DNA of 64,000 bases, from sequence record NC_061445.1; one strand, written 5' to 3'. Position 1 is the stretch's first letter. Every line of letters starts with the position of its first letter. Shown piece by piece: positions 23,073 through 64,000 of this stretch. The notes under the pieces were generated by a model. It was not told where the DNA came from and searched no databases. It saw only the letters and a list, made by a program, of their open reading frames with translations. Made by a program: the position numbers and the translations under genes.

Positions 23073-23107
23073 CTAGTCCTATCAGTGCGTCACATATTGA
23101 TGGCTGT

Positions 23108-23116
23108 TATTTACAG
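23108..23116 (-). promoter_or_regulatory. Class-M motif CTGTAAATA
   Basis: Intergenic, 36 nt upstream of the polymerase, just downstream of a terminator. Confidence 0.7.
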
Positions 23117-23128
23117 ATTCCGAAAAGC

Positions 23129-23155
23129 AAAAAGGGCAGCCGAAGCCACCCTTTT
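23129..23155 (-). terminator. Repeated-family terminator GGGTGGC-TTCG-GCTGCCC-TTTTT
   Basis: Hairpin plus U-tract after the 23165 stop. Confidence 0.85.
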
Positions 23156-23164
23156 GGATTAAAT

Positions 23165-24187: not shown

Positions 24188-24196
24188 TGTCGTTCC

Positions 24197-24785: not shown

Positions 24786-27700
24786 TTAGACTGATTTGTT
24801 TTTCGACATGGTGAGTTTCAGCTTGTCGAGCGCAGTGGTCACACGTTTGATATTCGTGATTGTGTAGCCAGCTTTCACGATCTTGTTGATGCGTGATTTC
24901 GCAGTAGCGACATTCTTCACGAACCCAATCCACATACCCGGCGCCTGGTCGAACGTACCGAACTTACGAGTGTTCGGAATCTTCGTGCCAACAAAGCGTT
25001 TCATTTTCGGGTTGGTCTTGAGGTCAAACATGATACGCAGTCGATCTTCCATAACCATTGGGTATGCCTTGATGTGGTTCTTATCAGAGGCAGACTTATG
25101 CTTAACGAGGAAGAACTTCGGCAACTGCTCTTGACCCTTCGTGGCCAGCTTAACGTTGAAGCCCATGCGCGGCGTTGACTCGTCGAAGAAGTCCAGAACA
25201 AACTCCAGACGCTTCTCGGACATACGGTCGAACGACAGCTTTTTCTTGACCTCGATGAAGTCAAGCAGTGCTTCGAAGTCAGCGTAGTAGGCGCAGTCGT
25301 AATAGACGTAATCGCCGAACTCCACGAAGTCGAACTCTTTGAGCGCCTTAGCATCAGGGTCAGTTGCATCAGCGTACAGAGCAACGAATCCGTTGTACAC
25401 TGTAGGCGTCAGCTCCAGAGCCATGTCACTACCAGTCGCCTCTGCCACGGCTTTCGCTCCAGGCTTCATGCGAGTAGTTGTGTTTGCCAGAGGCGGCAGG
25501 TCAGCGGCCTTACGACGGCGAACTTTCTTGGCAGCTTCTTCAACACCTTCGTTGATTGGCTTACCTTCTTCCTTGTTCTGCTTACGCTGGGCAACACGCG
25601 CAGCTTTACGCGCTTGCGCTTCGACCTTCTTCTCAGTCTCTTTGGTATCTGCTGTCTGCGTTTCGTCGAGAACGGTGTCTTCAACTTCAACACGGTTCGC
25701 TTCGGCATTAGCACGTTTGCGGTCTTTCTCATTCGCCCACGGCTTACGCTGTTCGAAGAAACGTTTCAGGTCAGCTTTATCCACCTTCGTTGCGATGTGA
25801 ACTTTCGTCGCAGGAATAGAGACAGTCTCACCAGTTCCGGCCAGACGTACACGCACAGTGCTGATTGGACTATCTGCACGGAGCTTACCGTCAACCATAC
25901 GAGCAGTGACAGACACGATCAGACCGTTACCGTATTCAGTAACTACTGGCGCACGATTCAGAGAGTCTTTCAGATTCTCACCGCTTGCGAAGTTGCGGTT
26001 ACGTGCCCAATCCAGAATACGCTCCAGACCCCAGCCATGACGATCAGGAATCTTCTGGTTCGCTACGAACGGAGTCTGCTCCATCACGCGGAAGTCATTC
26101 AGAGCAGGCGTAGACGGCAGCGCTTGCATTGCTGCAACCGTTGTGCGACGCATCTCTTGGAACTCCTGCGATTCGATTTCGTTCAGATCACGTTTCGCCA
26201 AGAAGTACGGCTCGAAGTCTTTCATCGTGTTGTTATCAAGCAGGAGCGATGGGCTCATCTTGATCGGGTCCAGCTTATACTGGTCGAGTGCTTCGTAACG
26301 CTTGTTGCCCTTCTCATCGAAGCGAGTCTTCTCAAGCGTCTTCCACATCAGACGAGCGACCTTACCAACTTCCAAGGTCTTATTCGTCATTACCCAGTCG
26401 ATGAAGACAACTTCACGAGCCATGTCGCCTGGCTTACCGTTCTCGTCCAGCTTCGCAGCAGCAACGTCAGGACGGAAGATACGCGCAGTAGACTGATCGT
26501 ATGTGCCCGGTGACCACGGAGTATCGCAGCGGATGATACGGCTACCCATCTGCATGTTGTGGCCTTCGGAGATCGCTTGTTCGTTCGCAATCAGAATCTG
26601 AACGTTCGGGTCAGTTTTGAATGCGTCGAGGTTAGCGTCTTTGTTCTGGCCGAGCTTACCGACTTCACCATGATACACTACAGCGACTTTCTTATAGTTC
26701 GCTGGCAGCGCATTGTAGATCGCGTTTGCAGCACGGACGTAGCGCGTGAACACAATCAGTTTGCCCTGCACTTCCGGCTTCCAGTAGTCTGGATCATCCG
26801 GCGGCGGAGTCATTGAAGGCGGCAGGTCTTGACGCTGGAACTCTTCGGACTGCTTACGCGCCAGATACTTCTGTCCGTTGTAGACAGCGATATCCAATTC
26901 ACGAGGCTGCACACCCGGTTTCCATTCGAAGATCTGTTGCTCTTTAACCATAATGTCACGTTCAGGTTGCACTTCGAAGTGCTTCTTGATACGGTCGATA
27001 ATGGTCAGCACTTTGGCCGAAACGAAGTTGTTAACGCCAGCAGCTTCAAACGTCAGACGAGCAACGTCATCACCCATTGGGTCAGTCAGCATCATCTCCA
27101 TACGCTGGAAGTACATGTTCAGGTCTGCGTTGCCCGCAAGCAGTGCGCCTAAATCATCGCCTTCTTCGATATCATCTTCGTCTATATCGGTCGCGTTCTC
27201 GTTGTCACCGCCACCAGTTTCATCGTCCTCGTCATCAGATGACTTAGACTTCTTGGCGTTTCGTGCGGCTTCGTCGAGTTTCTCCAGCACTTCTGCGTAC
27301 ATTGCGTTGTACACTTCTTGGTGCAGAGCAGAGTTCGGAACTGACGGGTCATCGATCTCAACCTGAATGAAGGTATCAATCGGGTTCGGCAGCATGAACG
27401 CCCAGTGCTTACGCTTGAACGAGATGAACGCTGTATGGTTTGCCATACGTGAGTGCGCACGACGAATCATTTCGATATCGTCTTTCGCGCCGTCATACGC
27501 AACATCCAGTGAGTCACCGAACATCGCAGGCGTCATCAGTGCAGCCTGACCAACGATATCACGCACACGGTCAGTTACCAGCGTACCAGTAGCGATACGA
27601 GCATAGCGAACAGACGGAGCAGTGAAGACCGCTTTGGTGTTGAAGTGAACCTGAGAGCCAGCCTGACCGCCAGAGAAGTTCTTCACTTTGTGAGACTCAT

Positions 27701-37640: not shown

Positions 37641-37707
37641 CGACTAAGGGCTGATTTGTCCGATATAGTGTTCGCATAGACTTTACAAATTTCAGGCGCA
37701 TGAATGC

Positions 37708-37737
37708 AAAAAGGGGCAGCCGAAGCCACCCCTTTTT
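37708..37737 (-). terminator. Repeated-family terminator GGGGTGGC-TTCG-GCTGCCCC-TTTTT
   Basis: Downstream of the histone-like gene. Confidence 0.85.
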
Positions 37738-37769
37738 GTTTCGTAGTAGTGTCGAATCGACCAGGCCGA

Positions 37770-38420
37770 TTAAACTTCTACTTTACCTTTTTTCTTGGTC
37801 TTCGCAGCTTTACGCGCGCCGGCTTTCTGAGCAGCAGTGCCTTTATGAGTTACGGCTTTTTGCGTAGTCTCTTTGCCTTTTTTCAGGCGTGGCATTGGTT
37901 TCAGTTTTGGCTTCTTCAGGGTAACAGCTTTAGGCTGTACTTTTGGAGTTACCAGTTTGCCGTTCTTGATCGCAGGCTTACGAGCTTTACGCGCGGCCAG
38001 ACGAGCTTTCTGTTTCGCGATCAGGTTGCTGTAACCAGCTTTCTGTTTCGCGGCCAGGTTGGAACGAGCGATTGCCTGACGTTTCAGCAGCAGCTTGCGG
38101 ATCTGAGCCTGGGATTTCTGAGTGGTTTTCAGACCGGCCTGGTATTTAGCCAGACGCTCTTTCAGGCGCTGTTCGATGCTTTTGCCTTTCGCTTTCTTAG
38201 CCTGCTTGCGCAGGTGAGTAGCACGTTCGTTGTCGAACTTTTTCTCAGAAGCGGTACGCGCTGGCTTTTTAGCTTTAGCGGCCTTAGGTGCTTTGGTCGC
38301 TTTAGGCGCCTTAGCAGCTTTCGGTGCTTTTGCTTTTTTAGCTTTAGGCGCTTTCGCAGCCGCAGGCTTTTTGGTCATCTTTGGATCTTTGGTGCTTTTC
38401 AGTTTGCGTTTTACGGCCAT
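37770..38420 (-). CDS. Histone H1-like Lys/Ala-rich DNA-binding protein (216 aa)
   Basis: KAPKA repeats; extremely basic composition; GAGG RBS. Confidence 0.75.
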   Translation of the reverse strand: MAVKRKLKSTKDPKMTKKPAAAKAPKAKKAKAPKAAKAPKATKAPKAAKAKKPARTASEKKFDNERATHLRKQAKKAKGKSIEQRLKERLAKYQAGLKTTQKSQAQIRKLLLKRQAIARSNLAAKQKAGYSNLIAKQKARLAARKARKPAIKNGKLVTPKVQPKAVTLKKPKLKPMPRLKKGKETTQKAVTHKGTAAQKAGARKAAKTKKKGKVEV

Positions 38421-38489
38421 GATTATATCCTCAAGTTACAATTGAACTTTCGTCCTGTAGGACATTAAGTTTTTGAAATCAGCATGTAA

Positions 38490-48189: not shown

Positions 48190-48509
48190 TCCACCGTATC
48201 GAGAAGTTGTGATGTGAACTCACGCAGGCGCGCTTCGAGAAACTTACCAGTCTCTGGATGACAGATGAGCTGGTCGTTTTTCAGATAGACACGATTCGAC
48301 GGTCTAAGCACTTTGCGCTTTTTAGGATTCATGCGCAGCGCTTGATGCACCGGTGTTGCGTAGAAGTCTTCTTCGACTTCATCCATGCAGTTCACATTGA
48401 ACACCACTTCGTACTTCGCAAACAAATGCAGGTTACGCGTGATAGTGCCCATGTCTATTGGTACGCTGTGCTTCTCATGATCGCGATTAAGCTGTCCGAA
48501 GATCATCAC
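48186..48509 (-). CDS. Hypothetical protein (107 aa)
   Basis: Overlaps sbcC stop; AAGG RBS. Confidence 0.65.
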   Translation of the reverse strand: MMIFGQLNRDHEKHSVPIDMGTITRNLHLFAKYEVVFNVNCMDEVEEDFYATPVHQALRMNPKKRKVLRPSNRVYLKNDQLICHPETGKFLEARLREFTSQLLDTVE

Positions 48510-50836
48510 ATCACCTTACGTGTTAATACGGACGTGCCGTTCTTCTTGGTCACTGTCCATTGATTATCTGAGAAGTGCTCGACACCGTTAGGCGTTATCC
48601 AGTAAACGTTCGGGATAATCTGCTTGAGTATCGGCAGGAAGTTATTGACGATGTGCTCACTTACTGCTGGGCTGCAACTGTTATCAGGTTCGTCCAGAAC
48701 GATGAAGTTAGTACGACGACCAGCTGGTATGAACGGCATGATCGCAACAGCAAACAACAGGCGGAAGCAGTTAGTCTCTGCGCCACTCATGATTGCAATG
48801 TCTGTGGTCTTCTTAGAAGTCACACGCGTAACAGTCGCACCAACACCCTGCTTGGTAGTAAACAGTTGGAAGCGCATAGGCTCAGGGAACACAAGGCCGC
48901 TGTACTCATTCAGCTTCGCTTCAATCTGCTGCAATCGACCTTCAACTGCTTTCAGCTTGAGTGCGTTGTTGCTGTATGCTTTGTACAGGACTTCGAATAC
49001 CTTACGCTTATCGATCATCGGCTGGAGCTTGGCCAACTTGGTACGCAGTTCACGCAGCGTTTCCTCGTAGTGCTCATGCTCCTGAATACGCATCTGAATG
49101 CCCTGAGCTTTGCGGTCTTTCTTCTCGATATCCGTGATGAGTTTGTTGAGTTCCTTCTCAATCTTTTTGTATCGACCATCGAGAACGTAGAACGGGTCTT
49201 CAGGTTCGCCTACAGCTTTCAGTGCAGAAGTCAGGTCTTTCAGAATCTCAAGATCCTTGATACGGTTCTTGATCGTCTTACGCGCTTTCTTCGGCTGCTT
49301 AACCGCTTTAGGTTTCTTGAGAGCGTCACGCTTCGCCACCAGCTTCTCGTACTTCTTAGCGGCCTCGAATTGTTCTTCCATCGTATCGAGTTTCTTCCCG
49401 ATAGACTTCAACTGCTTCTCAAGTTCTTTGCGGTCATGCTTAGGCTTCTTCACCTTGTTGTCTTTCAACGCGGTGAGTTCTGCATTCAGCTTGTGGTAGT
49501 CAATCGCTTCGATACACTCATCAATGATTGCCTGAGCTTTCGTTGCAGCGCGTGACATAGCTTTCAGGTCAACGTCTTGTCCGCAGGTAGGGCAAGAGTT
49601 ACCGTCATGGTCGTGCTCCTCAAACGCACGATACGCCTGAACTATCGCTTTGGATTCTGCTCGGGCATCTTGTGCCTCTTCCTGAGTTCGTTTAGGAGCT
49701 TTGAGCTTAGACAGCTTTTTACTGAGCTTGTCAACTGCTTCTCGCCAGTCGTCGTATTCTTCTTGTTGCTCATCAACTTTCTCCAACAGCTCCTGCAGGC
49801 TTTCTTCTTCCTTGACCAAAGCGCTGTGCTTCTTACGCAGCTTTTTGTTGTCGAGGTCAGCAACATCGCCGAGAGCTTTGATTTTCTTTTTGACCGATGC
49901 GAGTTCTGCTTCGTATTCTTCGAGGTCAGACACGTACTCATCGTAACGGTCAAACTCCACCAGCATACCACGAAGGTTATTCAGTTCACCTTTCGGATCG
50001 TCAGACTCAATGCCGAGCGTATCGAGCTGGTGCTTGAGCTTTTCGTACTTACGCGCAGACGAACGAGCAGAGCCGAGATCAATCAACTCTTCACCTAAAC
50101 GGTTACGGCGTTTCTTCAACTTGTCCGACTGTTCGATGATGGCTGCAAGCGTATTCTTTTCCTGAGCGTGAATGTCCAGCGCGTTCTGTTTACGCTGCGT
50201 CACGTCAAGCATATCAGCCAAGCCTTTAGATTCTGTCTCTGCTTCTTTCGCAAGGTCCAGTTTCTTTTTCAGCGCGATACGGATGTTATCGAACACATCA
50301 AGGCCGAATAGGTTTGTCAGATACTTGAGTCGATCAGCAGGTGACGAACGCTGGAACGGATGTTCAATCTGCGACTGAATGTAGCAGTAGCTATAGAACT
50401 CCTCACGCGTTAATGGCCAGTGCTTAGTCACCCAAGAACGTGCAACGTCCTGACGATCTACTTTCTGGTCTTCACCGTTGTAGTAAACTTTGTACTTGGT
50501 CTTCGTCTGCACGATGCGAACGATGCCACCAAGAGGTGAGTGCCACGACAGGTCAATCGAGCTATCCTTGCCGAGCATGTTACCCTTGTCTTTCTTTTTC
50601 AGAGCAAGCGGGTCTGCTTCATACAGCAATGTTGGGATAGCACCGAACAGGAGGCTTTTGCCTACACCATTCGTGTTGTCTTTGACGTTTGGACTATCGA
50701 GGTTCTTACCACAAATAGTTGCGAAGCCTTCACTGTCCAGTGTGTCGATATCAAGCTCTTTGTACACGCCAACATCGCGGAGATGAATCTCTTTCAGGCC
50801 GATGCCGTGGTTATGTTTCTGCTTCGCTTTGCCCAT
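48506..50836 (-). CDS. sbcC: SbcC/Rad50 (T4 gp46-like) ABC ATPase (776 aa)
   Basis: Walker A GKN...NGVGKS, long coiled coil with CPTCGQ zinc hook, MSGAE signature, VLDEPD Walker B. Confidence 0.92.
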   Translation of the reverse strand: MGKAKQKHNHGIGLKEIHLRDVGVYKELDIDTLDSEGFATICGKNLDSPNVKDNTNGVGKSLLFGAIPTLLYEADPLALKKKDKGNMLGKDSSIDLSWHSPLGGIVRIVQTKTKYKVYYNGEDQKVDRQDVARSWVTKHWPLTREEFYSYCYIQSQIEHPFQRSSPADRLKYLTNLFGLDVFDNIRIALKKKLDLAKEAETESKGLADMLDVTQRKQNALDIHAQEKNTLAAIIEQSDKLKKRRNRLGEELIDLGSARSSARKYEKLKHQLDTLGIESDDPKGELNNLRGMLVEFDRYDEYVSDLEEYEAELASVKKKIKALGDVADLDNKKLRKKHSALVKEEESLQELLEKVDEQQEEYDDWREAVDKLSKKLSKLKAPKRTQEEAQDARAESKAIVQAYRAFEEHDHDGNSCPTCGQDVDLKAMSRAATKAQAIIDECIEAIDYHKLNAELTALKDNKVKKPKHDRKELEKQLKSIGKKLDTMEEQFEAAKKYEKLVAKRDALKKPKAVKQPKKARKTIKNRIKDLEILKDLTSALKAVGEPEDPFYVLDGRYKKIEKELNKLITDIEKKDRKAQGIQMRIQEHEHYEETLRELRTKLAKLQPMIDKRKVFEVLYKAYSNNALKLKAVEGRLQQIEAKLNEYSGLVFPEPMRFQLFTTKQGVGATVTRVTSKKTTDIAIMSGAETNCFRLLFAVAIMPFIPAGRRTNFIVLDEPDNSCSPAVSEHIVNNFLPILKQIIPNVYWITPNGVEHFSDNQWTVTKKNGTSVLTRKVM

Positions 50837-51024
50837 TAGATGTACTCGCAGGTCTGTTCTTGAATCAGGCCTTTACCGTGAGTCTGTTCGAACACTTCGA
50901 TCTCATCATCGGTATAAGGCTCACCTGCTTCTGCGATAACGTCATACGAAATTGATTCGTCACGCGTATCTGACACAACAGGTTTGATGAGTCGCCACAG
51001 AGGTAATGCAGTTTTAGTAGTCAT
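50836..51024 (-). CDS. Hypothetical protein (62 aa)
   Basis: TAATG coupling on both sides. Confidence 0.6.
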   Translation of the reverse strand: MTTKTALPLWRLIKPVVSDTRDESISYDVIAEAGEPYTDDEIEVFEQTHGKGLIQEQTCEYI

Positions 51025-51233
51025 TAGTGAAATACCTTCTGGCGTTCAACCCAAAGATCAGCAGCACGATACACCTTACGCAGTTCTTCCAGCTTTGCTT
51101 CTGGAACAGGTGTTGGTGAAGAGAAGATGCACTGCGGTGTCTTCTCCTCTTTGCCTGTTACTGGATTGATATCGGTATCGTGACGCATTACGTTCCAGCA
51201 CCCGTTAGTGCGGATATTGATAGTCTGTTCCAC
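51024..51233 (-). CDS. Hypothetical protein (69 aa)
   Basis: GTG start, AGGT RBS; class-M motif upstream. Confidence 0.6.
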   Translation of the reverse strand: MEQTINIRTNGCWNVMRHDTDINPVTGKEEKTPQCIFSSPTPVPEAKLEELRKVYRAADLWVERQKVFH

Positions 51234-51269
51234 TGCAATGTACCTATATTTGGTCTAAATGATATATGC

Positions 51270-51278
51270 TATTTACAG
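51270..51278 (-). promoter_or_regulatory. Class-M motif CTGTAAATA
   Basis: Intergenic; heads the operon containing sbcC. Confidence 0.7.
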
Positions 51279-51296
51279 TTTTAAGGTGTATAGACG

Positions 51297-51328
51297 AAAA
51301 GAAGGGCCACCCTTAGGCAGCCCCTTCG
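51297..51328 (-). terminator. Rho-independent terminator
   Basis: GGGGCTGCC-TAAG-GGTGGCCC-TTCTTTT overlapping the 51313 stop. Confidence 0.65.
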
Positions 51329-53047: not shown

Positions 53048-54322
53048 TTACTTTTTCTTCTTTTTCTTTTTAGGCTTTTCGTCTTCATCGTCGTTGCCTA
53101 AATCAACCACCAGCTTGCCGCTATAGATATCAGACATGGTTCTGGTGATGCAGGTTTCGAGCATGATATCTGCCGGTACAGAAGTTGAGTTGAATGCAAC
53201 CTCTGCGTCGGCTAATGCTGATTGCAGATACACCAGACTGACCAGATTGACTTTGATGTTGTCTTTCTTGGTCATGTTCATGAACATCTTGAGGCCAGCA
53301 GACTGCCACTTGTTCGTCTCGGCGTAATGCCCCAGCACACCGTGAATAATCCAACGAGCTTTCGCTACGATGCCGCGCGGGTTGTTTGCTTCACGCAGGA
53401 ACTGAATCACACCAATCAGGTCCATCGAGAGATAAGCACCAATCGTCTGAACCGCTTTCGCTTCCATGTCGATTTCTGGATCAGCAGCAGCGAGTTCGGC
53501 AACGAGGTTCTTATCGAAGTCTTCGCCACCTTTAACAGACGAGTAGATGTTTTGCAGCATGGTGATTGCACCACGCATCTGACCACCAGCATACTCTGCA
53601 ACCTGATGCAGTGCCGCTTCTGCTTTATCACGAGCCTTGTCTTTCTTCGGCAGGATATCCAGCTTGCCGCTAATCTCTACCAGACGTTTGTGAATCACGT
53701 CAGTAGGAATAGGTCTGATTGGCAATTGGGTCATGCGACTGATCATGGTGTTCTTCATCTTCTCAGGGTTCGTCGTTACGAAGATGAAGACAACGTGCGC
53801 TGGTGGCTGTTCGGTAATCTTGAGTAGCTTAGATTCAGCAGCACTGGACATGAGGTGCGATTCATCGAAGATGAAGATGCGGCGTTTGAACATCGGGCTT
53901 AACGGTGCACTGTCCACGATCTTCTGTGAGCCGTCAACTTTACCTGCATCGCCACCCATGTCAAACTCTTGCACGTCCATGTGTGAACCCAAGTCCATCA
54001 GTTCACACGAACGACATTTACCACACGCGTTGAACGTGTCGCAGTTGATGTACTTCGCCACCAGACGTGCGAACGTTGTTTTACCGCTGCCGAGGTGGCC
54101 GGTGATAATCATCGTTGACGGAATCGTCTTCGACTTCTGCCAGCCTTTCATGATCTTGACGATGTGGTCTTGGCCAACATAGTCTTCGATACGCTTCGGT
54201 CGGAACTGGTCTGCGAAGTTAACTGTGGTTAGCTCTACAGACTCGGAAGAACCGCTTTTCTTCTTCGACGGTTTCCCATCGTCAAAGCTACGCTTCTTCT
54301 TTTTCTTTTCTTCTTTAGCCAT
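53048..54322 (-). CDS. dnaX: Clamp-loader subunit, DnaX (gamma/tau)-like AAA+ ATPase (424 aa)
   Basis: FRPKRIEDYVGQDHIV, GHLGSGKTTFARL, C....CGKCRSC zinc module, IFDESHLM, ISRM (SRC-like), GQMRGAI. Confidence 0.88.
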   Translation of the reverse strand: MAKEEKKKKKRSFDDGKPSKKKSGSSESVELTTVNFADQFRPKRIEDYVGQDHIVKIMKGWQKSKTIPSTMIITGHLGSGKTTFARLVAKYINCDTFNACGKCRSCELMDLGSHMDVQEFDMGGDAGKVDGSQKIVDSAPLSPMFKRRIFIFDESHLMSSAAESKLLKITEQPPAHVVFIFVTTNPEKMKNTMISRMTQLPIRPIPTDVIHKRLVEISGKLDILPKKDKARDKAEAALHQVAEYAGGQMRGAITMLQNIYSSVKGGEDFDKNLVAELAAADPEIDMEAKAVQTIGAYLSMDLIGVIQFLREANNPRGIVAKARWIIHGVLGHYAETNKWQSAGLKMFMNMTKKDNIKVNLVSLVYLQSALADAEVAFNSTSVPADIMLETCITRTMSDIYSGKLVVDLGNDDEDEKPKKKKKKK

Positions 54323-54358
54323 TGTACTTTGCCCTTTAGTCTAATGCGTTACATCAGG

Positions 54359-54367
54359 TATTTACAG
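54359..54367 (-). promoter_or_regulatory. Class-M motif CTGTAAATA
   Basis: Intergenic, 37 nt upstream of dnaX. Confidence 0.7.
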
Positions 54368-54376
54368 ATTTTAGAC

Positions 54377-54412
54377 AAAAAGAAAGGACCACATCCAAAA
54401 TGGAGGGTCCTT
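54377..54412 (-). terminator. Rho-independent terminator
   Basis: AAGGACC...TCCA-TTT-TGGA...GGTCCTT followed by TCTTTTT. Confidence 0.65.
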
Positions 54413-54465
54413 ATGGTGTTACAATAAGTTTGGGATGGTAACGCATCGGCAGTGGGCGCTGTCGA

Positions 54466-54663
54466 TTAGGCAAAGCACATTTCCCAGCGCGGTACAACGC
54501 GGAAGAAGTGCTTAAAGTTGGACGGTGGATTCTTCTTGATTGACTCAAGTTTCTGTTCCACTACGTCATAATCTTTTATGCCACTCTCAACGGTGTGAGT
54601 GGTGAACGTACCGTCAGCCTGAATCAAATCGGCGACAACACGGTAGCTTGGTCTACGAAGCAT
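54466..54663 (-). CDS. Hypothetical protein (65 aa)
   Basis: AGGAG RBS; CTGTAAACA variant at 54703-54711. Confidence 0.65.
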   Translation of the reverse strand: MLRRPSYRVVADLIQADGTFTTHTVESGIKDYDVVEQKLESIKKNPPSNFKHFFRVVPRWEMCFA

Positions 54664-54757
54664 CTATTCTCCTGTGCTAAAATTTCTCGTTCTTCTGAAT
54701 TATGTTTACAGTTTACCGCGAGTAGTCACATAAGAATAAAGTCAGACAAATCTTAAA

Positions 54758-55087
54758 ACTCCAATAGGCTCTCAGTAGAAAACTTATTGGAGTCCACCCT
54801 GACAAGATGACGGTCCTGTCAAGGTTTTCTCCCCGTGCTATTCAATGCACCAGCACGGTAGCGCTCGCGGTCTTACGCCCTTTGTGGCAGCGAACATTTC
54901 GGCAGGTAGCGTGGTTCGCAGCCCTAGGCAGCCGCTTTCGGCCATTAGCGATAACGCGGTGTTACGCTACTTGGCCTAGGGTGACTCTGGGCCGAGTCTG
55001 TACAAAAAAGAGTTCGGCCTATCCCCAAATTCGGCAAAAGAAATAAGCCGAACTAAACAGTCAGCGCAAACTCCGTATGCACTGTTT
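54758..55087 (-). ncRNA. Candidate structured non-coding RNA (~330 nt), family not recognised
   Basis: Gene-free gap with seven consecutive stems, several with minus-strand G:U pairs; CTAATTT motif just upstream; last stem followed by TTTT. Confidence 0.6.
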
Positions 55088-55098
55088 TGTACTGTCAT

Positions 55099-55105
55099 AA
55101 ATTAG
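55099..55105 (-). promoter_or_regulatory. Class-L motif CTAATTT heading the candidate ncRNA
   Basis: Between the HAD gene stop and the first hairpin; no RBS-bearing ORF follows. Confidence 0.55.
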
Positions 55106-55132
55106 AAACATCCTGTAATATTCAGACAATTC

Positions 55133-58126: not shown

Positions 58127-58164
58127 AGTAACCTCAATTCTCAGGAGTAGGTTATCGCAGCGAG

Positions 58165-58824
58165 CTACGAGGAGAAGTGTATGAACATTTGAACAGGTCG
58201 CGCATACGGATTATGGATAGTGCGGAGCAGTTGCTCGAAATGCACATCACGGCCACGCAGGTAATTGCAGTTATCGAAAATGATCAAACTGTACGGCTGT
58301 GTGTTCTTCACAACGTATCGCTTGTCTGTGGCGAGCCGAGGCTTTATCTCAAAGCTCTCTTTGATCTGCTGGCACATGCGACCATAACCAGAGCTATCGC
58401 TGTAGACGAACGCATCGCACTTAGTGGGGCGAACATCAAACAGATCAGGCTCTCTCGTACCGATATACAGGCATCTGGCTTCTGGGTTCTTTTCCATGAA
58501 GTCCATGAGCAGCCACTGCGCAAAAACAGTAGCGCCGCTGCGTTGAGGCAGATGGAAACCAACAGTGTTGTAATCACGGAGGATTTCGTATGACACTTCT
58601 ACCTTTGAAGCAGCCTCAGCGATTTGCTCTGCTGTCGGTATGACACGGCGTCGGGCGTACTCTTCGGCTGAGATTTTACCAAACGCGTAGTCGTCATCAA
58701 CTTCGGAATTAAGTTTGTAGTTAGCGCTGGCGAGAGCAGAATGCTGGACGGAATCGAATGCGCGTTTACGCACGGACTCGACTAACGTGAGCATTGCTTG
58801 CTGTTCGGCATTAAGTTCAAACAT
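58165..58824 (-). CDS. Hypothetical protein (219 aa) with degenerate P-loop-like motifs
   Basis: FHLPQRSGAT (Walker A-like, K to A) and SLIIFDN (Walker B-like). Confidence 0.55.
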   Translation of the reverse strand: MFELNAEQQAMLTLVESVRKRAFDSVQHSALASANYKLNSEVDDDYAFGKISAEEYARRRVIPTAEQIAEAASKVEVSYEILRDYNTVGFHLPQRSGATVFAQWLLMDFMEKNPEARCLYIGTREPDLFDVRPTKCDAFVYSDSSGYGRMCQQIKESFEIKPRLATDKRYVVKNTQPYSLIIFDNCNYLRGRDVHFEQLLRTIHNPYARPVQMFIHFSS

Positions 58825-58833
58825 AATGGTTCC

Positions 58834-59046
58834 TTATTTATCAGGGGTTGGTGGAGACGGTCTTTTCACCATGCTCGTTTTATCGACATAGTGAAAACCA
58901 AAGGCATTCGCCTTGTACTGCTGACGCGCTTTGTTATCGCGGTGCTTTTTCAAATTAGCCTCACGATCCATATCGTCAAAGATACCCGTTCGACGATGGT
59001 ACTTAAAATCAGGGTGTACTGAGATATGTTTGACGATAGCGGTCAT
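58834..59046 (-). CDS. Hypothetical protein (70 aa)
   Basis: GAGG RBS. Confidence 0.6.
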   Translation of the reverse strand: MTAIVKHISVHPDFKYHRRTGIFDDMDREANLKKHRDNKARQQYKANAFGFHYVDKTSMVKRPSPPTPDK

Positions 59047-59057
59047 AGGTTATTCCT

Positions 59058-59555
59058 CTATACGGGTTTGAGTTTCAGATGCGCCCACGGAAAATCTGCT
59101 TTCTCCAGCAACTCGTTTGCAGTTCCCATCTCGGCGAATTTGTCAAACACATGACCGTACATCGCAGCGAACTCGGCATTCTCCAAGTCTGCTTGCCAAT
59201 CATCATTATCGGTCACATGCTTCTGCCAGATCTCATCGTGCAACTTAGAGAAGGCTTCGACACGCTTAGGGTAAAGCAGCGAAAACAGGTCACGGGCGAA
59301 ACAGATTTTATACTTGTCCTCAGAAGCAAGTTTCTGCAAAGAGGTCAATGGGTATTTACAGTCAAAAGCAGACAGCACCTCGCTATACTGACGAAACAGA
59401 CGCTTATTCTTTACAGCAATCAATTCCATCGGGCAGTCTTTGATTAGACGCATCACCAACTTCTTGGAGCGCAGTTCAGGCCATTCAGATGGAGGCAACA
59501 CAGCGCTTTGGGACAACTTAAACTCAAGTCGAAACAGAACTTCAATAGGGCTCAT
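59058..59555 (-). CDS. Hypothetical protein (165 aa)
   Basis: ATGA overlap with the upstream gene. Confidence 0.65.
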   Translation of the reverse strand: MSPIEVLFRLEFKLSQSAVLPPSEWPELRSKKLVMRLIKDCPMELIAVKNKRLFRQYSEVLSAFDCKYPLTSLQKLASEDKYKICFARDLFSLLYPKRVEAFSKLHDEIWQKHVTDNDDWQADLENAEFAAMYGHVFDKFAEMGTANELLEKADFPWAHLKLKPV

Positions 59556-61129
59556 TCTGCGTCCTCTAAATATGTGATATGGTCAGAGAATGGTTTTTGA
59601 ATAAACAGTGCTTCGTCATAATGAATCTCACCATTGACCGTATCAATCAACGCACCATCGTGCTCCAGCGAGTAAATACATTTGACCTGCGTGTCGTCCA
59701 CAAGAAGTTTCATCAGCCTGTACGATTCAATGCCTGAGAAAATATGATTGAGGATTTTTCGTTTCCTGCGTTCATTGATTTTCAATTTCTTGAGATCATA
59801 TTTAACACCAGACTGACAAGCAAGGGTTCGCTCTCCGAATTTCGTTTCACGTATGCGCTCGATATAAATATCAGTTAACGCAGACAGCGCGACAGACAAC
59901 GGGATTGAATCGTTATTCCACTTTCGGATAAAATCGAAAGTCTGCTTTGTCTCCATAAGCCTACGCAATTGAGCAAACACTCTACCGCGCATTGAATAAG
60001 ACAACTGACCCATTGAGAAGATCGTCGCATAGAAACAAATCTTCGTTTCTGCTTTCGGTAGATTGTTGCGATGAGCAATATCGTCAACGGAAGTCACGCC
60101 TTCAAGGAACGAACATGCGATGCCATTAACTCGAAGCTCCTCAAGTAAAATGTTGAGCTGGCTGCTGGACATATCCCAGTTGGTTCCTATAGCACTGCAC
60201 ATCTGTTTGAGTTCCGATGGGAACGATTGGAAGCCACCACCCTTCTCAAACAAACGACCTCCAATCTTTGCTAGCCGATACACAGGCATATAGCGAATAA
60301 TCAGCGGAGACTCCTGAACTATCTGCACAGGCCCGCTAAGTATTGACTGGAGAGATGCAAGGACATGATGATACTGCCCTTGTGCCCGCTGCGACTTCAT
60401 GTATGACCGTTGTTCGAGATAAGTTAGAATGGGATCAATTCGAATCTCATTCGGAGCCAACTTAGCAAGAACGGCCGTGTATAACTTTTTAGCCTCTCTG
60501 TCCCTGTTTGAGCATAACGCTTTGAGATCATGTCGTGGCCACTTGAATGGTTTTTTCACAGCAACATCTAACATGTCTTTTATCGTTTGCCCGTGCTGCT
60601 CGTTTACCAAGCGCAAAGGACTATACAGACGAGTAACCTTCAAAAGGTCATCGCCCGTCTTAGGCTTCTCAGGGTACATGCACTCTAACACTTCGGCCCT
60701 TATGCGGAAGCGACGACACACTCCAGGTTTGCCCTTCTTGAAGATATGTCGTTTATGTTCGAAGACGTTATCGAGTAACCATTCTAGTGCTCGACTAAAA
60801 TGTTTCTCTGTCTTAGCAAACTTAGGCGCTACTGGTCCCCAACACTGCGAATTTACTCCGAATACCATCGGCAGAACTTTTCGCCCGAACTTAGAGGGGA
60901 ACGGTGTCCAAACCTCTCCGAACTTAGCGTTTCTCTGCTGGCTCTTAACAGGCGTATACAGCGATAGCTGCAACACATGCCAAAAGAACAGATTAATCTG
61001 TTTTCGGTATTCAGCTTCATGTTTCTTCGGCCCATCGTACGGACAGGCGAATACTATGTTATTCTGAACCCACTTGATAGGAAACATCTCCTGGTACGTG
61101 GGATTCTTCACCAAATACGGAGAAGCCAT
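59552..61129 (-). CDS. Compact family-A-polymerase-fold protein (525 aa) lacking an exonuclease domain
   Basis: GGRLFEKGGGFQSFP, NWDMSSSQLNIL, KICFYATIF, NHIFSGIE, LEHDGALI occur in Pol A motif order. Confidence 0.55.
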   Translation of the reverse strand: MASPYLVKNPTYQEMFPIKWVQNNIVFACPYDGPKKHEAEYRKQINLFFWHVLQLSLYTPVKSQQRNAKFGEVWTPFPSKFGRKVLPMVFGVNSQCWGPVAPKFAKTEKHFSRALEWLLDNVFEHKRHIFKKGKPGVCRRFRIRAEVLECMYPEKPKTGDDLLKVTRLYSPLRLVNEQHGQTIKDMLDVAVKKPFKWPRHDLKALCSNRDREAKKLYTAVLAKLAPNEIRIDPILTYLEQRSYMKSQRAQGQYHHVLASLQSILSGPVQIVQESPLIIRYMPVYRLAKIGGRLFEKGGGFQSFPSELKQMCSAIGTNWDMSSSQLNILLEELRVNGIACSFLEGVTSVDDIAHRNNLPKAETKICFYATIFSMGQLSYSMRGRVFAQLRRLMETKQTFDFIRKWNNDSIPLSVALSALTDIYIERIRETKFGERTLACQSGVKYDLKKLKINERRKRKILNHIFSGIESYRLMKLLVDDTQVKCIYSLEHDGALIDTVNGEIHYDEALFIQKPFSDHITYLEDAE

Positions 61130-61162
61130 TGCATACTCCAGAAAAAGTGCTTCTTGCTCTTA

Positions 61163-61171
61163 TTTTTACAG
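61163..61171 (-). promoter_or_regulatory. Class-M motif variant CTGTAAAAA
   Basis: 34 nt upstream of the Pol-A-like gene. Confidence 0.45.
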
Positions 61172-61199
61172 TTTTTGGTGCTTTTCGATCTTTTTCTTG

Positions 61200-61480
61200 T
61201 TTTAGGTACAAAACAGAGTCACATCTTAACCCTCACTTCAACACCCCTACCTAAACCTCATGCGGACAAGCGAACCTCAGCCGCCCGCCAGCCGACAAGC
61301 TAATCAACTGGCTTCGCTAGGACAGCTAACAAGCTAGGGCTAAATAGCTGGCTAGATAGGCTTATATTCATCATAGATGCTAGGGCTTTAATGGGTATCT
61401 AAGTGCTAAAAATGAGCCAAGCGCGGATAGTCGTATGACGCTCGCTACGCATGTGAAATCAGCCGTAGACAGCTTAAAAG
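61200..61480. repeat. Non-coding tract with clustered GCTA/AGCT short repeats and a C-rich run; candidate origin
   Basis: About eight GCTA in ~61299-61409, preceded by a G-free C/A-rich run; within a ~490-nt gene-free gap. Confidence 0.45.
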
Positions 61481-61623
61481 CGAAAAATCACCTAACTGAT
61501 TTCGGTCAAAAATACCATGTAACTTTTTTCGAAAATCGCACTCGAAACTGTACGAATCGTGAGATTTTTCTGAAAATAGAGGAAAAACCCGAATAAAATC
61601 AAGGACTTTTCCCCCTTTTTCAG

Positions 61624-63404: not shown

Positions 63405-63426
63405 AATCTTCTCCTCTGTGTGGTTG

Positions 63427-63433
63427 AAATTAG
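63427..63433 (-). promoter_or_regulatory. Class-L motif CTAATTT
   Basis: 23 nt upstream of 63404 in the divergent intergenic region. Confidence 0.55.
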
Positions 63434-63460
63434 TGACTAAAAATTTCTACCTTCGACCTA

Positions 63461-63467
63461 GTAAATA
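63461..63467 (+). promoter_or_regulatory. Class-M motif core GTAAATA on the plus strand
   Basis: 36 nt upstream of the only plus-strand gene. Confidence 0.55.
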
Positions 63468-63502
63468 CTTATTTATACGCATGTCAAGACACGGAGCCTT
63501 TT

Positions 63503-64000
63503 ATGCGTATTCTCTCAGGCGACCCGGGCAAGGTTAACTTCGCGTTGTCTGTTCAAGAGTTTAAGGACAAACGCATTACCGTGCTGGGTACGCGGATGTT
63601 TCAACATCCTATCCAGAACCTGCATTACGATATGCGCCAACCAGTCAAAGAGTTCATGAAAGAGCTTGAAGACATTTGGAAGCGCTATGGACCGTTCGAT
63701 GCAATGTGCTTTGAACGTTTTCAGTCACGCGGATTAGGCGGCAACACCATTGAAGCAATCAGTCTCATGCTAGGTGTTATCTCGCTGTTCGCGCTGAAAA
63801 AGAATTGTCCAATTGATTTGATTACGGCTAGTCAGTGGAAGAACGCGTTTAACCGCTCGATGGATCTCAAGGGGTACTACGCGCAGCACAATCTGACTTC
63901 GAAAAAGAGTCGTAAAGCAATTCACGAATTTGATGCCAGCCTTATCGGCGTCTACACCTTCTACCGTCACTCAGGAATCAAACCATTTGCTGGCTTCCAT
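63503..64000 (+). CDS. ruvC: RuvC-like Holliday junction resolvase (partial, runs off the right edge)
   Basis: ACGGAG RBS; MRILSGDPG, CFERF, ITASQWK, HEFDA acidic RNase H-fold motifs; 166 open codons; absent from the ORF track. Confidence 0.8.
   Translation, partial: MRILSGDPGKVNFALSVQEFKDKRITVLGTRMFQHPIQNLHYDMRQPVKEFMKELEDIWKRYGPFDAMCFERFQSRGLGGNTIEAISLMLGVISLFALKKNCPIDLITASQWKNAFNRSMDLKGYYAQHNLTSKKSRKAIHEFDASLIGVYTFYRHSGIKPFAGFH

What the first reader, a model, noticed from the sequence alone, without database searches (positions are those of the whole stretch)
59552..61129. A second, minimal Pol-A-superfamily polymerase-like gene
Seen in correct order and plausible spacing: GGRLFEKGGGFQSFP (cf. 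TGRLSS..PNLQNIP), NWDMSSSQLNIL (motif A Asp), ETKICFYATIF (motif B Lys/aromatic), NHIFSGIE (cf. N..QG) and LEHDG (motif C). Both catalytic Asp positions appear present. There is no exonuclease domain, and the ~270-aa N-terminus is unassigned. A full replicative Pol A already exists at 19899. Established: this fold includes DNA polymerases and single-subunit RNA polymerases. Inference: a specialised primase/initiator, repair polymerase or mini RNA polymerase, notably adjacent to the repeat-rich gap.
Basis: partly seen in the sequence, partly recalled or inferred. Interest (0 to 1): 0.72.

Follow-up and report, generated by a model that had tools for sequence, protein, structure and literature searches.

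The report
Minimal TV-Pol polymerase in jumbo phage
The gene is real and encodes a stripped-down relative of family A DNA polymerases belonging to the little-studied 'TV-Pol' family of viruses and mobile elements, sitting in an unusually fast-diverging slot of an Erwinia jumbo phage that already has a full replication machine; its exact job (most likely priming or starting DNA synthesis) is still untested.

Summary
They are the most conserved positions in 26 close and 132 distant homologues: R292 and K363 are invariant, and D319, H490-D491-G492, Q301 and G466/E468 are at least 90% conserved. A confident AlphaFold2 model (pLDDT 86.8) matches only family A DNA polymerases, then T7-like RNA polymerases, in the PDB. 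Profile searches and gene neighbourhoods place the protein in the TV-Pol family (Iyer, Abhiman, Aravind 2008), in the branch carrying the N-terminal 'TV-PolN' domain. Pfam, NCBIfam and PADLOC have no model for it, so every phage record calls it 'hypothetical'. There is no exonuclease domain. The N-terminal 272 residues fold confidently but match no solved structure. The phage (pEa_SNUABM_3, Alexandravirus) also has a replicative Pol A, clamp, clamp loader and DnaG primase. The gene, its 494-nt upstream gap and the overlapping downstream ORF form a sharply bounded hypervariable cassette: 45% identity within the genus against 84-93% for flanking genes. The closest non-phage relatives occupy the replicase slot of int-alpA islands. 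Most likely it is an active primase-polymerase or initiator; function is inferred, not shown.

The parts
59552..61129 (-). TV-Pol-family polymerase-like gene, 525 aa (pEaSNUABM3_00219)
   Evidence: ORF; 100% match to QZE56416.1; Pol A fold; TV-Pol family membership; purifying selection, pN/pS 0.2
60530..61129 (-). N-terminal domain, residues 1-200 ('TV-PolN'-type), with conserved LFFWH and GxCRxFRI signatures
   Evidence: Shared with the Ma-LMM01 TV-Pol (RRLFIH, GICFRYRI; profile positions 6-376 matched at E=1.5e-38). AF2 pLDDT 91.2. No significant PDB fold match: best E=0.85, with only non-significant winged-helix regulators recurring. No Pfam or PDB sequence match
60335..60517 (-). Probable thumb, residues ~205-265: helices 211-223, 231-243, 247-265
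   Evidence: DSSP of both AF2 models. Its position just before the Arg hairpin is the same as in Pol A and TV-Pol (PMC2579912). The assignment is inferred
60206..60280 (-). Motif 2 beta-hairpin YRLAKIGGRLFEKGGGFQSFPSELK, with invariant R292, plus Q301 and K308
   Evidence: R292 in 132/132 and Q301 in 129/132 sequences. hhalign pairs R292 with the Pol A TGR Arg and Q301 with the LQQIP Gln. Bridge to Taq TGRLSSSDPNLQNIP
60146..60187 (-). Motif A GTNWDMSSSQLNIL, with catalytic D319 (N317 also near-invariant)
   Evidence: D319 in 131/132 and N317 in 130/132 sequences; it lies at a strand end followed by a helix. There is no conserved Glu at the steric-gate position (position 326 is N/Y/T/S/R)
60011..60049 (-). 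Motif B (O-helix-like) ETKICFYATIFSM, with invariant K363, Y367 (K+4) and F371 (K+8)
   Evidence: K363 in 132/132 sequences. hhalign pairs it with the Pol A motif B Lys. The Arg at K-4 (RxxxK) is not conserved
59714..59755 (-). Pre-motif-C ILNHIFSGIESYRL (family consensus LQGxEA; cf. Pol A NxxxQGxAAD)
   Evidence: G466 in 130/132 and E468 in 131/132 sequences. Q465 occurs in 115/132 but is Ser in the Alexandravirus clade. hhalign pairs QG with QG
59645..59677 (-). Motif C IYSLEHDGALI, with H490, catalytic D491 and G492
   Evidence: H in 121/132, D in 130/132 and G in 130/132 sequences. It sits in a beta-hairpin turn. hhalign with relaxed MAC pairs HDG with the window Pol A's HDS
61130..61623 (-). 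494-nt upstream non-coding gap: own transcription unit, leader and possible cis-site
   Evidence: A gap of 390-500 nt is present in all 17 related phage loci. Long gaps also precede the other clade-II members examined
61570..61623 (-). Terminator-like hairpin plus T-run ending the preceding operon; also the upstream boundary of the variable cassette
   Evidence: Inverted repeat I2. It is the only conserved structure in the gap: 10 pairs, 5 with compensatory changes. Nucleotide homology to same-genus phages stops at about 61570
61515..61525 (-). Conserved box AAGTTACATGG (family AAAWTTACAYGG), promoter-like
   Evidence: Invariant columns in A4. It is not significantly recurrent in the window. 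Function is inferred
61302..61450 (-). Cluster of nine TAGC-containing words (8 YTAGC)
   Evidence: Densest such cluster in the 64-kb window. 8 observed against 1.74 expected; 0 of 2000 local shuffles reach it. The AD1-type alleles carry TGTAGC x3-5 and L006 carries CCTGCC x5, but several lineages show no enrichment
61165..61171 (-). CTGTAAA box about 35-40 nt before the ATG, followed by an A-rich stretch and a GGAG ribosome-binding site
   Evidence: Read. A conserved CTGTAAA lies at a similar distance from the start codon in relatives. Function is inferred
59058..59555 (-). Downstream 165-aa ORF overlapping the polymerase gene by 4 nt (ATGA); a possible partner
   Evidence: Always abutting and 156-174 aa in Alexandravirus-like loci, but unalignable between alleles and with no homologue beside distant family members. 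Only a sub-threshold AbiJ_NTD3 hit
59070..61570 (.). Hypervariable cassette (gap + polymerase-like gene + downstream ORF) bounded by conserved flanks
   Evidence: blastn against AD1, L005, L014 and Y3: about 80% identity outside the cassette, and only short 65-72% patches inside it. Amino-acid identities: 45-51% for the gene against 80-93% for the flanks

Best explanation
The gene encodes a TV-Pol-family enzyme. It has an N-terminal TV-PolN-type domain with no solved structural relative, followed by the minimal thumb-palm-fingers core of the family A polymerase / T7-like RNA polymerase superfamily, and it has no nuclease domain. Shown: the fold, the family and the conservation of the metal-binding Asp pair (D319, D491), the primer/template-contacting Arg (R292), the O-helix Lys (K363) and the QG and HD motifs. 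This indicates an active, template-dependent nucleotidyl transferase. Inferred: it acts as a specialised primase-polymerase or replication initiator (or restart enzyme) for the phage, working alongside the replicative UDG-exo-Pol A, clamp, clamp loader and DnaG primase. It is expressed from its own transcription unit, which begins after a terminator and includes a long leader carrying clustered short words. The N-terminal domain and/or the translationally coupled downstream ORF may supply template or site binding. The gap, the gene and the partner ORF diversify together as a cassette. My confidence is about 0.9 that it is an active TV-Pol-family polymerase and about 0.4 that its role is priming or initiation. 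The overall figure given is a blend of the two.
For: Fold: all top PDB matches of the full-length model are Pol I, Taq, apicoplast Pol, Pol theta, Bst, DpoZ and T7 DNAP (E 2e-5 to 4e-3, probability ~1.0), followed by POLRMT and T7 RNAP. BFVD returns virophage and giant-virus replication proteins and phage Pol A. Motifs; collinear hhalign to the window's Pol A with P=0.0078 on the catalytic halves; bridge to Taq. Family: the Alexandravirus-only profile finds 417 cluster representatives. Members lie next to a serine recombinase, an integrase plus ParA and Rha/AntA-KilA-C proteins, which are the neighbourhoods that defined TV-Pol (PMC2579912). The Ma-LMM01 ORF beside transposases is hit at E=1.5e-38, N-terminal domain included. 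Function: the closest non-phage relatives sit after int-alpA, in the slot that P4-like satellites and PICIs use for their primase/replicase (the architecture is from my own knowledge). Distant phage members sit among replication genes: UvrD helicase, RNase H, 5'-3' exonuclease. The window gene lies in a replication/recombination region with a clamp loader, SbcC, an HJ resolvase and a DnaG primase nearby. The only tested TV-Pol, CcPol-MP, is a primase-polymerase (PMC7581432). Selection: pN/pS 0.2, and the gene is syntenic in more than 57 phage records across genera.
Against: No biochemistry exists for any TV-PolN-type protein (PMC7581432 says so). The phage already encodes a DnaG-type primase, so a primase is not obviously needed. 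TV-Pol's hallmark partners are not adjacent: no D5-like helicase and no recombinase. A CcPol-style conserved OB-fold partner is not supported, because the downstream ORF is not conserved across the family. The Arg of RxxxK, the steric-gate Glu and the Glu of HDE are all missing, so substrate choice and even catalytic efficiency are uncertain. Sequence-level similarity to Pol A is weak (hhalign E 0.008-0.12; no Pfam or PDB-sequence hit). Extreme divergence between alleles is unusual for a core replication enzyme. Word clusters in the gap are heterogeneous among relatives.
Confidence: 0.55

Rival explanations
1. It is an exonuclease-less repair, translesion or end-joining polymerase (functionally like Pol theta or Pol nu). 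It would fill gaps or join broken ends during recombination-dependent replication, or after the host cuts the phage genome.
For: There is no proofreading domain. Pol theta is among the best fold matches. CcPol-MP shows terminal transferase and microhomology-type extension. SbcC-like nuclease, HJ resolvase and helicase genes lie in the same region. The phage already has a DnaG primase.
Against: Island relatives occupy a replicase slot, not a repair context. The family's defining contexts are self-replicating elements (PMC2579912). The conserved N-terminal domain and the private long leader are not explained by this role.
Confidence: 0.18
2. It is a miniature single-subunit RNA polymerase. It would make either an origin primer transcript or transcripts of a few phage genes.
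For: POLRMT and T7 RNAP are significant fold matches, with the highest query-normalised TM scores (0.35-0.40). HDG resembles the RNAP-type HD[S/C] more than HDE, and there is no Glu steric gate. Iyer et al. proposed that the ancestral TV-Pol-like enzyme had RNA-polymerising primase activity. No phage RNAP is reported for this phage group, only a sigma-like factor (PMC7412058).
Against: DNA polymerases give better E-values than RNAPs. Position K+8, which is Tyr in T7 RNAP, is Phe/Met here. The N-terminal domain does not match the T7 RNAP or POLRMT N-terminal domains. No specificity-loop-like insertion is evident. CcPol strongly prefers dNTPs.
Confidence: 0.12
3. It is a conflict (counter-defence or exclusion) factor. 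The polymerase chemistry would be used against host defence systems, satellites or competing phages, which would drive the cassette's hypervariability.
For: The cassette is sharply bounded and hypervariable while the flanks are conserved. An adjacent slot shows non-homologous replacement. The closest relatives lie in islands that carry defence cargo such as type I R-M and AAA_15 ATPases. The downstream ORF has a sub-threshold AbiJ N-terminal domain hit.
Against: No PADLOC model hits the protein or its relatives. In the islands the gene sits in the replication slot, not among the cargo. The catalytic motifs and the primer/template-binding residues are those of a templated polymerase.
Confidence: 0.1
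4. It is a domesticated or decaying remnant of a TV-Pol transposon with no role in the phage.
For: TV-Pols are typically carried by mobile elements, and one such element is integrated in cyanophage Ma-LMM01 (PMC2579912).
Against: No recombinase or transposase is nearby. The gene holds the same syntenic position in Alexandravirus, Rivsvirus and JA-type phages. The phage clade is monophyletic. Catalytic residues are retained and the gene is under purifying selection.
Confidence: 0.04

Closest known systems
TV-Pol family (Transposon-Virus polymerases; Iyer, Abhiman, Aravind 2008, Biol Direct 3:39), branch with the N-terminal TV-PolN domain
   Same: Minimal thumb, Arg-bearing beta-hairpin, palm with two Asp, and fingers with a conserved Lys. 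No nuclease domain. About 400-600 aa. A shared N-terminal domain. Profile-level homology to members in resolvase, KilA-C, integrase and transposase neighbourhoods and to the Ma-LMM01 protein. Coexists with the genome's normal replication enzymes, as the paper noted for other hosts.
   Different: Here it is a vertically inherited, syntenic gene of a jumbo-phage lineage, with no recombinase and no D5-like helicase beside it. It lies in a hypervariable cassette. The Arg of the RxxxK motif is not conserved in this branch, and motif C is HDG.
CcPol-MP (PolA-SSB) primase of staphylococcal SCCmec (Bebel et al. 2020, PMC7581432; Rice 2022 preprint)
   Same: An exonuclease-deficient A-family-type polymerase encoded by a non-cellular element. 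It is followed by a small, tightly coupled ORF. It is the only member of the proposed TV-Pol group with biochemistry (a dNTP-using primase-polymerase).
   Different: CcPol is recognisably Pol I-like. It sits next to the CHEAP subfamily (PMC10201439), keeps a remnant of the exonuclease domain, keeps the ribonucleotide-discriminating residues and lacks TV-PolN. Its partner MP is an OB-fold SSB and a helicase follows in the operon. Here the N-terminus is unrelated to the exonuclease domain, the downstream ORF is not conserved across the family and no helicase follows.
Canonical family A DNA polymerases (Pol I, Taq, T7 DNAP, Pol theta; Pfam PF00476)
   Same: Overall fold and the order and chemistry of motifs 2, A, B, pre-C and C. 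Residue equivalences via the window's Pol A and textbook numbering from memory: R292~Klenow R668, D319~D705, K363~K758, Y367~F762, Q/S465-G466~Q849-G850, H490-D491~H881-D882.
   Different: No Pfam hit and no exonuclease domain. Lacks the R754, E710 and E883 equivalents. The motif 2-to-A linker is shorter. The fingers are much smaller. The N-terminal domain is novel.
T7-like single-subunit RNA polymerases (T7 RNAP, POLRMT)
   Same: Same superfamily fold (E ~3e-3 to 1e-2). HD followed by a small residue in motif C. No Glu steric gate.
   Different: About half the size. The N-terminal domain shows no match to the RNAP promoter-binding domains. No Tyr at K+8. No evidence of a specificity loop.

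Membership tests
TV-Pol family (PMC2579912) | Profile-level sequence homology to recognised TV-Pols | tested here: met
   The A1 profile finds 417 representatives. The Ma-LMM01 ORF 22746-24266, beside transposases, scores E=1.5e-38 with A2, 3e-26 with A5 and 1.3e-3 with the A1-only profile at Z=1e6. Caveat: that this ORF is the paper's Ma-LMM01 TV-Pol is my inference from context, because the supplement text was not available.
TV-Pol family (PMC2579912) | [quoted passage not shown] | tested here: met
   R292 is invariant in 132/132 sequences. It lies in strands 284-286 and 293-295.
TV-Pol family (PMC2579912) | RRM-like palm with two conserved metal-chelating Asp | tested here: met
   D319 in 131/132 and D491 in 130/132 sequences. 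Pol A palm fold by Foldseek. The Asp-Asp distance was not measurable.
TV-Pol family (PMC2579912) | Fingers module with an RxxxK motif | tested here: inconclusive
   K363 is invariant, but position K-4 is V/K/R in the family and Ala in the window protein. A different register for the Arg cannot be excluded.
TV-Pol family (PMC2579912) | Bi-helical thumb preceding the hairpin | tested here: inconclusive
   Helices 231-243 and 247-265 precede the hairpin in both AF2 models. Their antiparallel packing could not be inspected.
TV-Pol family (PMC2579912) | No fusion or linkage to nuclease domains; occurs in viruses and mobile elements | tested here: met
   No exonuclease signature by Pfam, PDB sequence or fold. 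Members are found in phages, islands and transposon-like loci.
TV-Pol family (PMC2579912) | Either a D5-like helicase (fused or adjacent) or the N-terminal TV-PolN domain with recombinase/transposase neighbours | tested here: met
   The N-terminal domain is homologous to that of the Ma-LMM01 protein. Family members sit beside resolvase, integrase and KilA-C genes. In the window itself no recombinase or D5 helicase is adjacent.
Family A DNA polymerase (Pfam PF00476 DNA_pol_A) | Reaches the Pfam gathering score | tested here: not met
   0 Pfam families even at E<=10. The profile against PDB sequences finds no Pol A.
Family A DNA polymerase (Pfam PF00476 DNA_pol_A) | Right-hand Pol A fold with motifs A, B and C in order | tested here: met
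   Foldseek probability 1.0 to Pol I, Taq, Pol theta and others. Collinear hhalign.
Family A DNA polymerase (Pfam PF00476 DNA_pol_A) | Steric-gate Glu (Klenow E710), motif B Arg (R754) and motif C Glu (E883) | tested here: not met
   No conserved Glu at 324-328. Position K-4 is not Arg. Motif C is HDG. The residue numbering is from memory.
PolA-SSB (CcPol-MP) primases | Small OB-fold SSB partner encoded immediately downstream, followed by a helicase | tested here: not met
   A coupled downstream ORF exists, but it is not conserved across the family, has no SSB/OB Pfam or PHROG hit and is not followed by a helicase.
T7-like single-subunit RNA polymerases | Promoter-binding N-terminal domain, specificity loop, and Tyr at K+8 | tested here: not met
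   The N-terminal model has no RNAP match. Position K+8 is F/M. RNAP fold hits are weaker than DNAP hits.
Known anti-phage defence proteins (PADLOC) | Match to a defence-system model | tested here: not met
   0 hits for the protein, its downstream ORF and four relatives.

The most novel reading that the evidence does not exclude
The gap, the polymerase and the coupled ORF form a type-specific, self-contained initiation module. In this reading, a polymerase whose novel-fold N-terminal domain recognises short words in its own upstream DNA starts synthesis there de novo. That would make it an origin-specific initiator-polymerase with no separate initiator, diversifying in allelic 'specificity types' much as lambdoid O/ori pairs do. 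It would also be the first handle on the TV-PolN-type enzymes proposed to resemble the ancestor of Pol A and T7-like RNA polymerases.
Probability: 0.12. Interest if true: 0.8.

Novelty: new member of a known kind. Interest (0 to 1): 0.5.

Why it matters
[quoted passage not shown] Only the atypical, Pol I-like CcPol has ever been assayed, and no curated library has a model for the family. As a result these genes are invisible in annotation: more than 57 jumbo-phage records call this one 'hypothetical', one calls it a helicase, and AD1's copy is annotated without its first ~177 codons. A culturable Erwinia phage with a compact, confidently modelled TV-PolN-type enzyme, natural allelic series and a complete conventional replisome offers a practical system. 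It could be used to test what these enzymes do, which nucleotide they use, and why a phage with Pol A and DnaG keeps one.

Tried and rejected
1. Sequence searches of the single protein and of the A1 and A2 profiles against Pfam, NCBIfam, PADLOC and PDB sequences gave nothing meaningful. A 'CAP repeat' hit is a repeat artefact over a helix-turn-helix-like stretch.

2. hhalign of the full alignments was weak (E=0.12-0.22). It improved only on the catalytic halves, and motif A is mis-registered by the aligner.

3. The CcPol-MP-like partner hypothesis was rejected at the family level. An HMM of the downstream ORFs finds no counterpart beside distant members.

4. The 381-aa ORF upstream of the island TV-Pols is not homologous to the phage's 369-aa upstream gene or to TV-PolN.

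5. A structured RNA in the gap was rejected. There is no Rfam hit, and RNAalifold finds only the terminator.

6. Generic 'iterons in every gap' was rejected. Exact k-mer enrichment is significant only in some lineages.

7. The AAWTTACAYGG box is not a recurrent promoter motif in the window.

8. tblastn from a Nostoc member did not reach Ma-LMM01, so the genome was fetched and searched by HMM instead.

9. Island relatives are not present in complete E. coli genomes, and only fragments occur in Proteus and two plasmids.

10. The first genome-contig scan with A2 failed because no stretch was conserved enough. It was repeated with the tighter A5 alignment.

11. Pfam on all of A2 exceeded the size limit.

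Full report
**What is there.** The window matches Erwinia amylovora jumbo phage pEa_SNUABM_3 (Alexandravirus, 266 kb) at 100% protein identity for this ORF. Window coordinate plus 124,000 gives the record coordinate. The finding's ORF is real: 59552-61129 on the minus strand, ATG start, 525 aa, annotated only as 'hypothetical protein'.

**Is it more than chance?** In an alignment of 26 homologues down to 36% identity, the quoted motifs are the invariant blocks: G290-G291-R292-L293, E295, G298-G299-F300-Q301, N317, D319, S323-Q324, N326, K363, Y367, H462, G466, E468, and S487 with E489-H490-D491-G492-A493-L494.

An exhaustive HMM search of 1.84 billion cluster representatives with that profile found 417 proteins at E<=1e-3 and 165 at E<=1e-10. 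Most are 450-600 aa and share the C-terminal ~250 residues. In a 132-sequence alignment, where many rows are only 17-22% identical to the window protein, R292 and K363 are invariant. Y284, G291, G299, Q301, K308, N317, D319, N438, G466, E468, H490, D491, G492 and K512 are at least 90% conserved.

The family consensus compares with Pol A as follows (Pol A consensus and residue numbering are textbook knowledge, checked against Taq):
- Motif 2: [STG]GR[LI]xExGGG[FL]Q[SN]x[SP][RK] against TGRLSSxxPNLQNIPxR.
- Motif A: NYD[LI]xSSQxxIL against DYSQIELRIL.
- Motif B: WKxC[LF]YAxx[MF]G against AKxxNFGxxYG.
- Pre-C: LQGxEA against IQGxAAD.
- Motif C: NEHDG[LV][IV] against QVHDE[LI][VL].

**Fold.** A template-free AlphaFold2 model built from the 26-sequence alignment has mean pLDDT 86.8 and pTM 0.83. 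Foldseek against the PDB returns only family A DNA polymerases at the top: E. coli Pol I 8oo6 at E=2e-5, then Taq, apicoplast Pol, Pol theta, Bst, DpoZ and T7 DNAP, all with probability ~1.0 over about 300 aligned columns. Single-subunit RNA polymerases follow (POLRMT and T7 RNAP, E 3e-3 to 3e-2).

Against predicted viral structures, the best non-self matches are uncharacterised jumbo-phage proteins, virophage and giant-virus 'DNA replication / helicase-primase-polymerase' proteins, and phage Pol A.

The secondary-structure context of the two Asp residues is that of the Pol A palm. D319 ends a strand and is followed by a helix, and H490-D491 lie in a beta-hairpin turn. I could not measure the Asp-Asp distance because coordinates are not exposed.

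Sequence-only bridges to Pol A are weak. There is no Pfam hit even at E<=10 and no PDB-sequence hit for the protein or its profiles. Profile-profile comparison against an alignment seeded on the window's own Pol A gives E=0.12, or P=0.0078 on the catalytic halves. That alignment is collinear: R292 with the TGR Arg, Q301 with the LQQIP Gln, K363 with the motif B Lys, QG with QG, and, with a relaxed threshold, HDG with the phage Pol A's HDS. Motif A is mis-registered by the aligner because the motif 2-to-A linker is about 9 residues shorter.

**What family.** The virophage hits suggested TV-Pol, the 'Transposon-Virus polymerase' family defined computationally by Iyer, Abhiman and Aravind (PMC2579912). 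I tested this in four ways:

1. P0062, hit by the Alexandravirus profile at 8e-19, lies 11 nt downstream of a serine recombinase in a mobile-element context. P0144 lies beside an integrase and ParA.
2. A scan of reference genomes found members in Nostoc, Calothrix, Rhodothermales, Bacteroidota, SAR324 and myxobacterial genomes. In five cyanobacterial loci the gene is immediately preceded by a Rha/AntA-KilA-C protein. The 2008 paper describes TV-Pol + gamma-delta resolvase + Bro-N/KilA-C elements.
3. In Microcystis phage Ma-LMM01, which the paper names as carrying a TV-Pol element, the 506-aa ORF next to two transposase genes is hit by my broad profile at E=1.5e-38 (Z=1e6) over profile positions 6-376. 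That span includes the N-terminal domain, with shared signatures (RRLFIH against LFFWH, and GICFRYRI against GVCRRFRI) and the R, NYD, K and HDG motifs.
4. The features the paper lists are present, except that the Arg of RxxxK is not conserved.

I therefore file the protein as a TV-Pol of the TV-PolN-bearing branch. One caveat is that equating the Ma-LMM01 ORF with the paper's entry rests on context, because the supplement was not readable. No curated library has a model for the family, and the 2023 reclassification of family A polymerases does not cover it.

**The N-terminus.** Residues 1-272 were modelled separately from a 41-sequence alignment, giving pLDDT 91.2 and pTM 0.86. Foldseek finds no significant PDB match. 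The best E is 0.85 with probability <=0.09, and the only recurring, non-significant hits are winged-helix regulators such as PadR bound to its operator. Profiles find nothing in Pfam or PDB sequences. So the domain is neither a vestigial 3'-5' exonuclease (unlike CcPol) nor a T7 RNAP-type N-terminal domain. Residues ~205-265 (three helices) are probably the thumb.

**Genomic setting.** The window holds a full replisome:
- a 1057-aa Pol A with an exonuclease domain at 19899-23072,
- a processivity factor at 18465-19643,
- a clamp loader at 53048-54322,
- helicases at 15885-17486 and 24786-30632,
- an SbcC-like protein at 48506-50836.

A DnaG-type primase (CHC2 Zn-ribbon + Toprim) lies about 6.7 kb beyond the window's end. 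The phage group ('Lupandier': Lu11, PaBG, AD1, Y3, Alexandra) is described as having a UDG-exo-Pol A, clamp, clamp loader and a sigma-70-like factor, with no RNA polymerase reported (PMC7412058).

The candidate gene is syntenic in all related phages: a 369-aa gene, a ~219-aa gene, a 390-500-nt gap, the TV-Pol gene, then an abutting ORF. The phage clade is monophyletic (98/97 support). It lies within one of two major family clades, together with other large-phage members and int-alpA island members. The resolvase-type members form the other clade.

**The upstream gap (61130-61623).** It begins with a terminator-like hairpin plus T-run, which is the only conserved structure (10 pairs, 5 with compensatory changes). 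So the gene starts its own transcription unit. After the terminator come:
- a conserved AAAWTTACAYGG box,
- a variable stretch with nine TAGC words (8 YTAGC against 1.7 expected, reached by 0 of 2000 local shuffles; the densest cluster in the window),
- a CTGTAAA box about 35-40 nt before the ATG.

Related alleles carry other repeated words (TGTAGC, CCTGCC), but several lineages show no enrichment. 'Repeat-rich' is therefore an overstatement, and an iteron interpretation is only a possibility.

**A hypervariable cassette.** Within the genus the flanking genes are 80-93% identical at the protein level, but this gene is only 45-51% identical. The syntenic Rivsvirus ortholog is 22% identical, while that genus's replicative Pol A is 84% identical. 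The Rivsvirus copy still keeps the R, NYD, K and QGxE motifs and the motif C Asp.

Nucleotide homology to same-genus phages stops at about 61570, at the terminator, and returns only at 58958-59069. A second slot of non-homologous replacement follows at 58152-58958. Between SNUABM3 and Alexandra, which share the same allele, pN/pS is 0.2, so each allele is under purifying selection (dS is saturated). Divergence is spread along the protein. The fingers are the most variable part, and the motif 2/A palm segment is the most conserved.

The downstream ORF (59058-59555, overlapping by 4 nt) is conserved in position but unalignable between alleles, and it has no counterpart beside distant members.

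**How it probably works.**

Shown:
- It is a TV-Pol-family protein with a Pol A-type catalytic core.
- The residues that in Pol A bind the two metals, the primer/template minor groove (Arg of motif 2; Gln of QG, which is Ser in this clade), the incoming triphosphate (motif B Lys) and the primer terminus (His of HD) are conserved.

Inferred:
- It is an active templated polymerase.
- Its role is priming or initiation.

The support for priming or initiation is contextual:
- The nearest non-phage relatives (E 4e-64 and 8e-51, full length) sit after int-alpA in islands with defence cargo. That is the slot P4-like satellites and PICIs use for their primase/replicase (the architecture is from my own knowledge).
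- Distant phage members lie among replication genes.
- TV-Pols displace prim-pol domains next to D5 helicases.
- CcPol-MP is a primase-polymerase.

Against this reading:
- The phage has a DnaG primase.
- No helicase or recombinase is adjacent.
- There is no conserved SSB-type partner.
- Allelic divergence is extreme.
- The steric-gate Glu, the RxxxK Arg and the HDE Glu are absent, which leaves sugar selectivity open.

The rivals are a repair or end-joining polymerase, a mini RNA polymerase, a conflict factor and a selfish remnant. They are weighed in the report sections.

**Verdict.** The protein is a new, unannotated member of a known but essentially uncharacterised family, so it is not categorically new. 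Interest is moderate. The hypervariable cassette, the novel-fold N-terminal domain and the experimentally tractable phage make it a good entry point to a prediction that has stood since 2008.

Noticed in passing
window 58152-58958 (ORFs 58165-58824 and 58834-59046, minus strand): A second variable slot lies right next to the cassette. The 219-aa ORF has no homologue at the same position in Alexandra, AD1, L005, L014 or Y3 (blastp E>0.1), but it is 55% identical to the counterpart in metagenomic phage L006. This points to non-homologous replacement between conserved flanks.
   Followed up: partly
window 61435-61596 (+ strand), GenBank CDS pEaSNUABM3_00220: The 53-aa CDS annotated inside the upstream gap has an ORF counterpart only in Alexandra, which carries the same allele. 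It overlaps the terminator and conserved box. It is probably not a gene.
   Followed up: yes
L002:8001-9584 (Dickeya phage AD1, AD1_214) and L062:2809-4476 (pEa_SNUABM_5 gp225): Annotation problems in relatives. AD1's ortholog is annotated from an internal start (350 aa instead of ~527-538), losing most of the N-terminal domain. The pEa_SNUABM_5 ortholog is labelled 'putative helicase' with no support from my searches.
   Followed up: partly
window 19899-23072 (minus strand): The replicative Pol A has motif C HDS instead of the usual HDE (invariant H865-D866, S867 >=90%), and about 230 residues precede its exonuclease domain. PMC7412058 describes a UDG domain there in this phage group. Pfam reported only the exonuclease and polymerase domains at E<=0.01.
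   Followed up: no
window 38272-38330 (and 38126-38400, + strand): A tandem repeat of period 18/27, rich in GCTTTAGC, explains the window's second-densest YTAGC cluster. It lies within overlapping ORFs 37704-38468(+) and 37770-38420(-), and which strand is coding there was not resolved.
   Followed up: no
window 54323-55132, 50837-51312 and 63405-64000: These are other long stretches free of ORFs >=100 aa (810, 476 and 596 nt) in a densely packed, mostly minus-strand genome. No tRNA and no Rfam family at the gathering score occurs anywhere in the window.
   Followed up: no
L060:1-14951 and L061 (metagenomic islands): These are compact int-alpA islands carrying a TV-Pol in the replicase position plus type I R-M (HsdM/HsdS), an AAA_15/SMC-like ATPase and RadC. 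They look like a satellite or defence-island type whose replicase is a TV-Pol rather than an AEP/DnaG primase-helicase. L059 has a 2101-aa protein with no Pfam or PHROG match directly downstream of the TV-Pol.
   Followed up: partly
window 24786-30632 (minus strand): A 1948-aa protein matches a dedicated PHROG 'DNA helicase' family end to end (phrog_21391). That is unusually large for a phage helicase.
   Followed up: no
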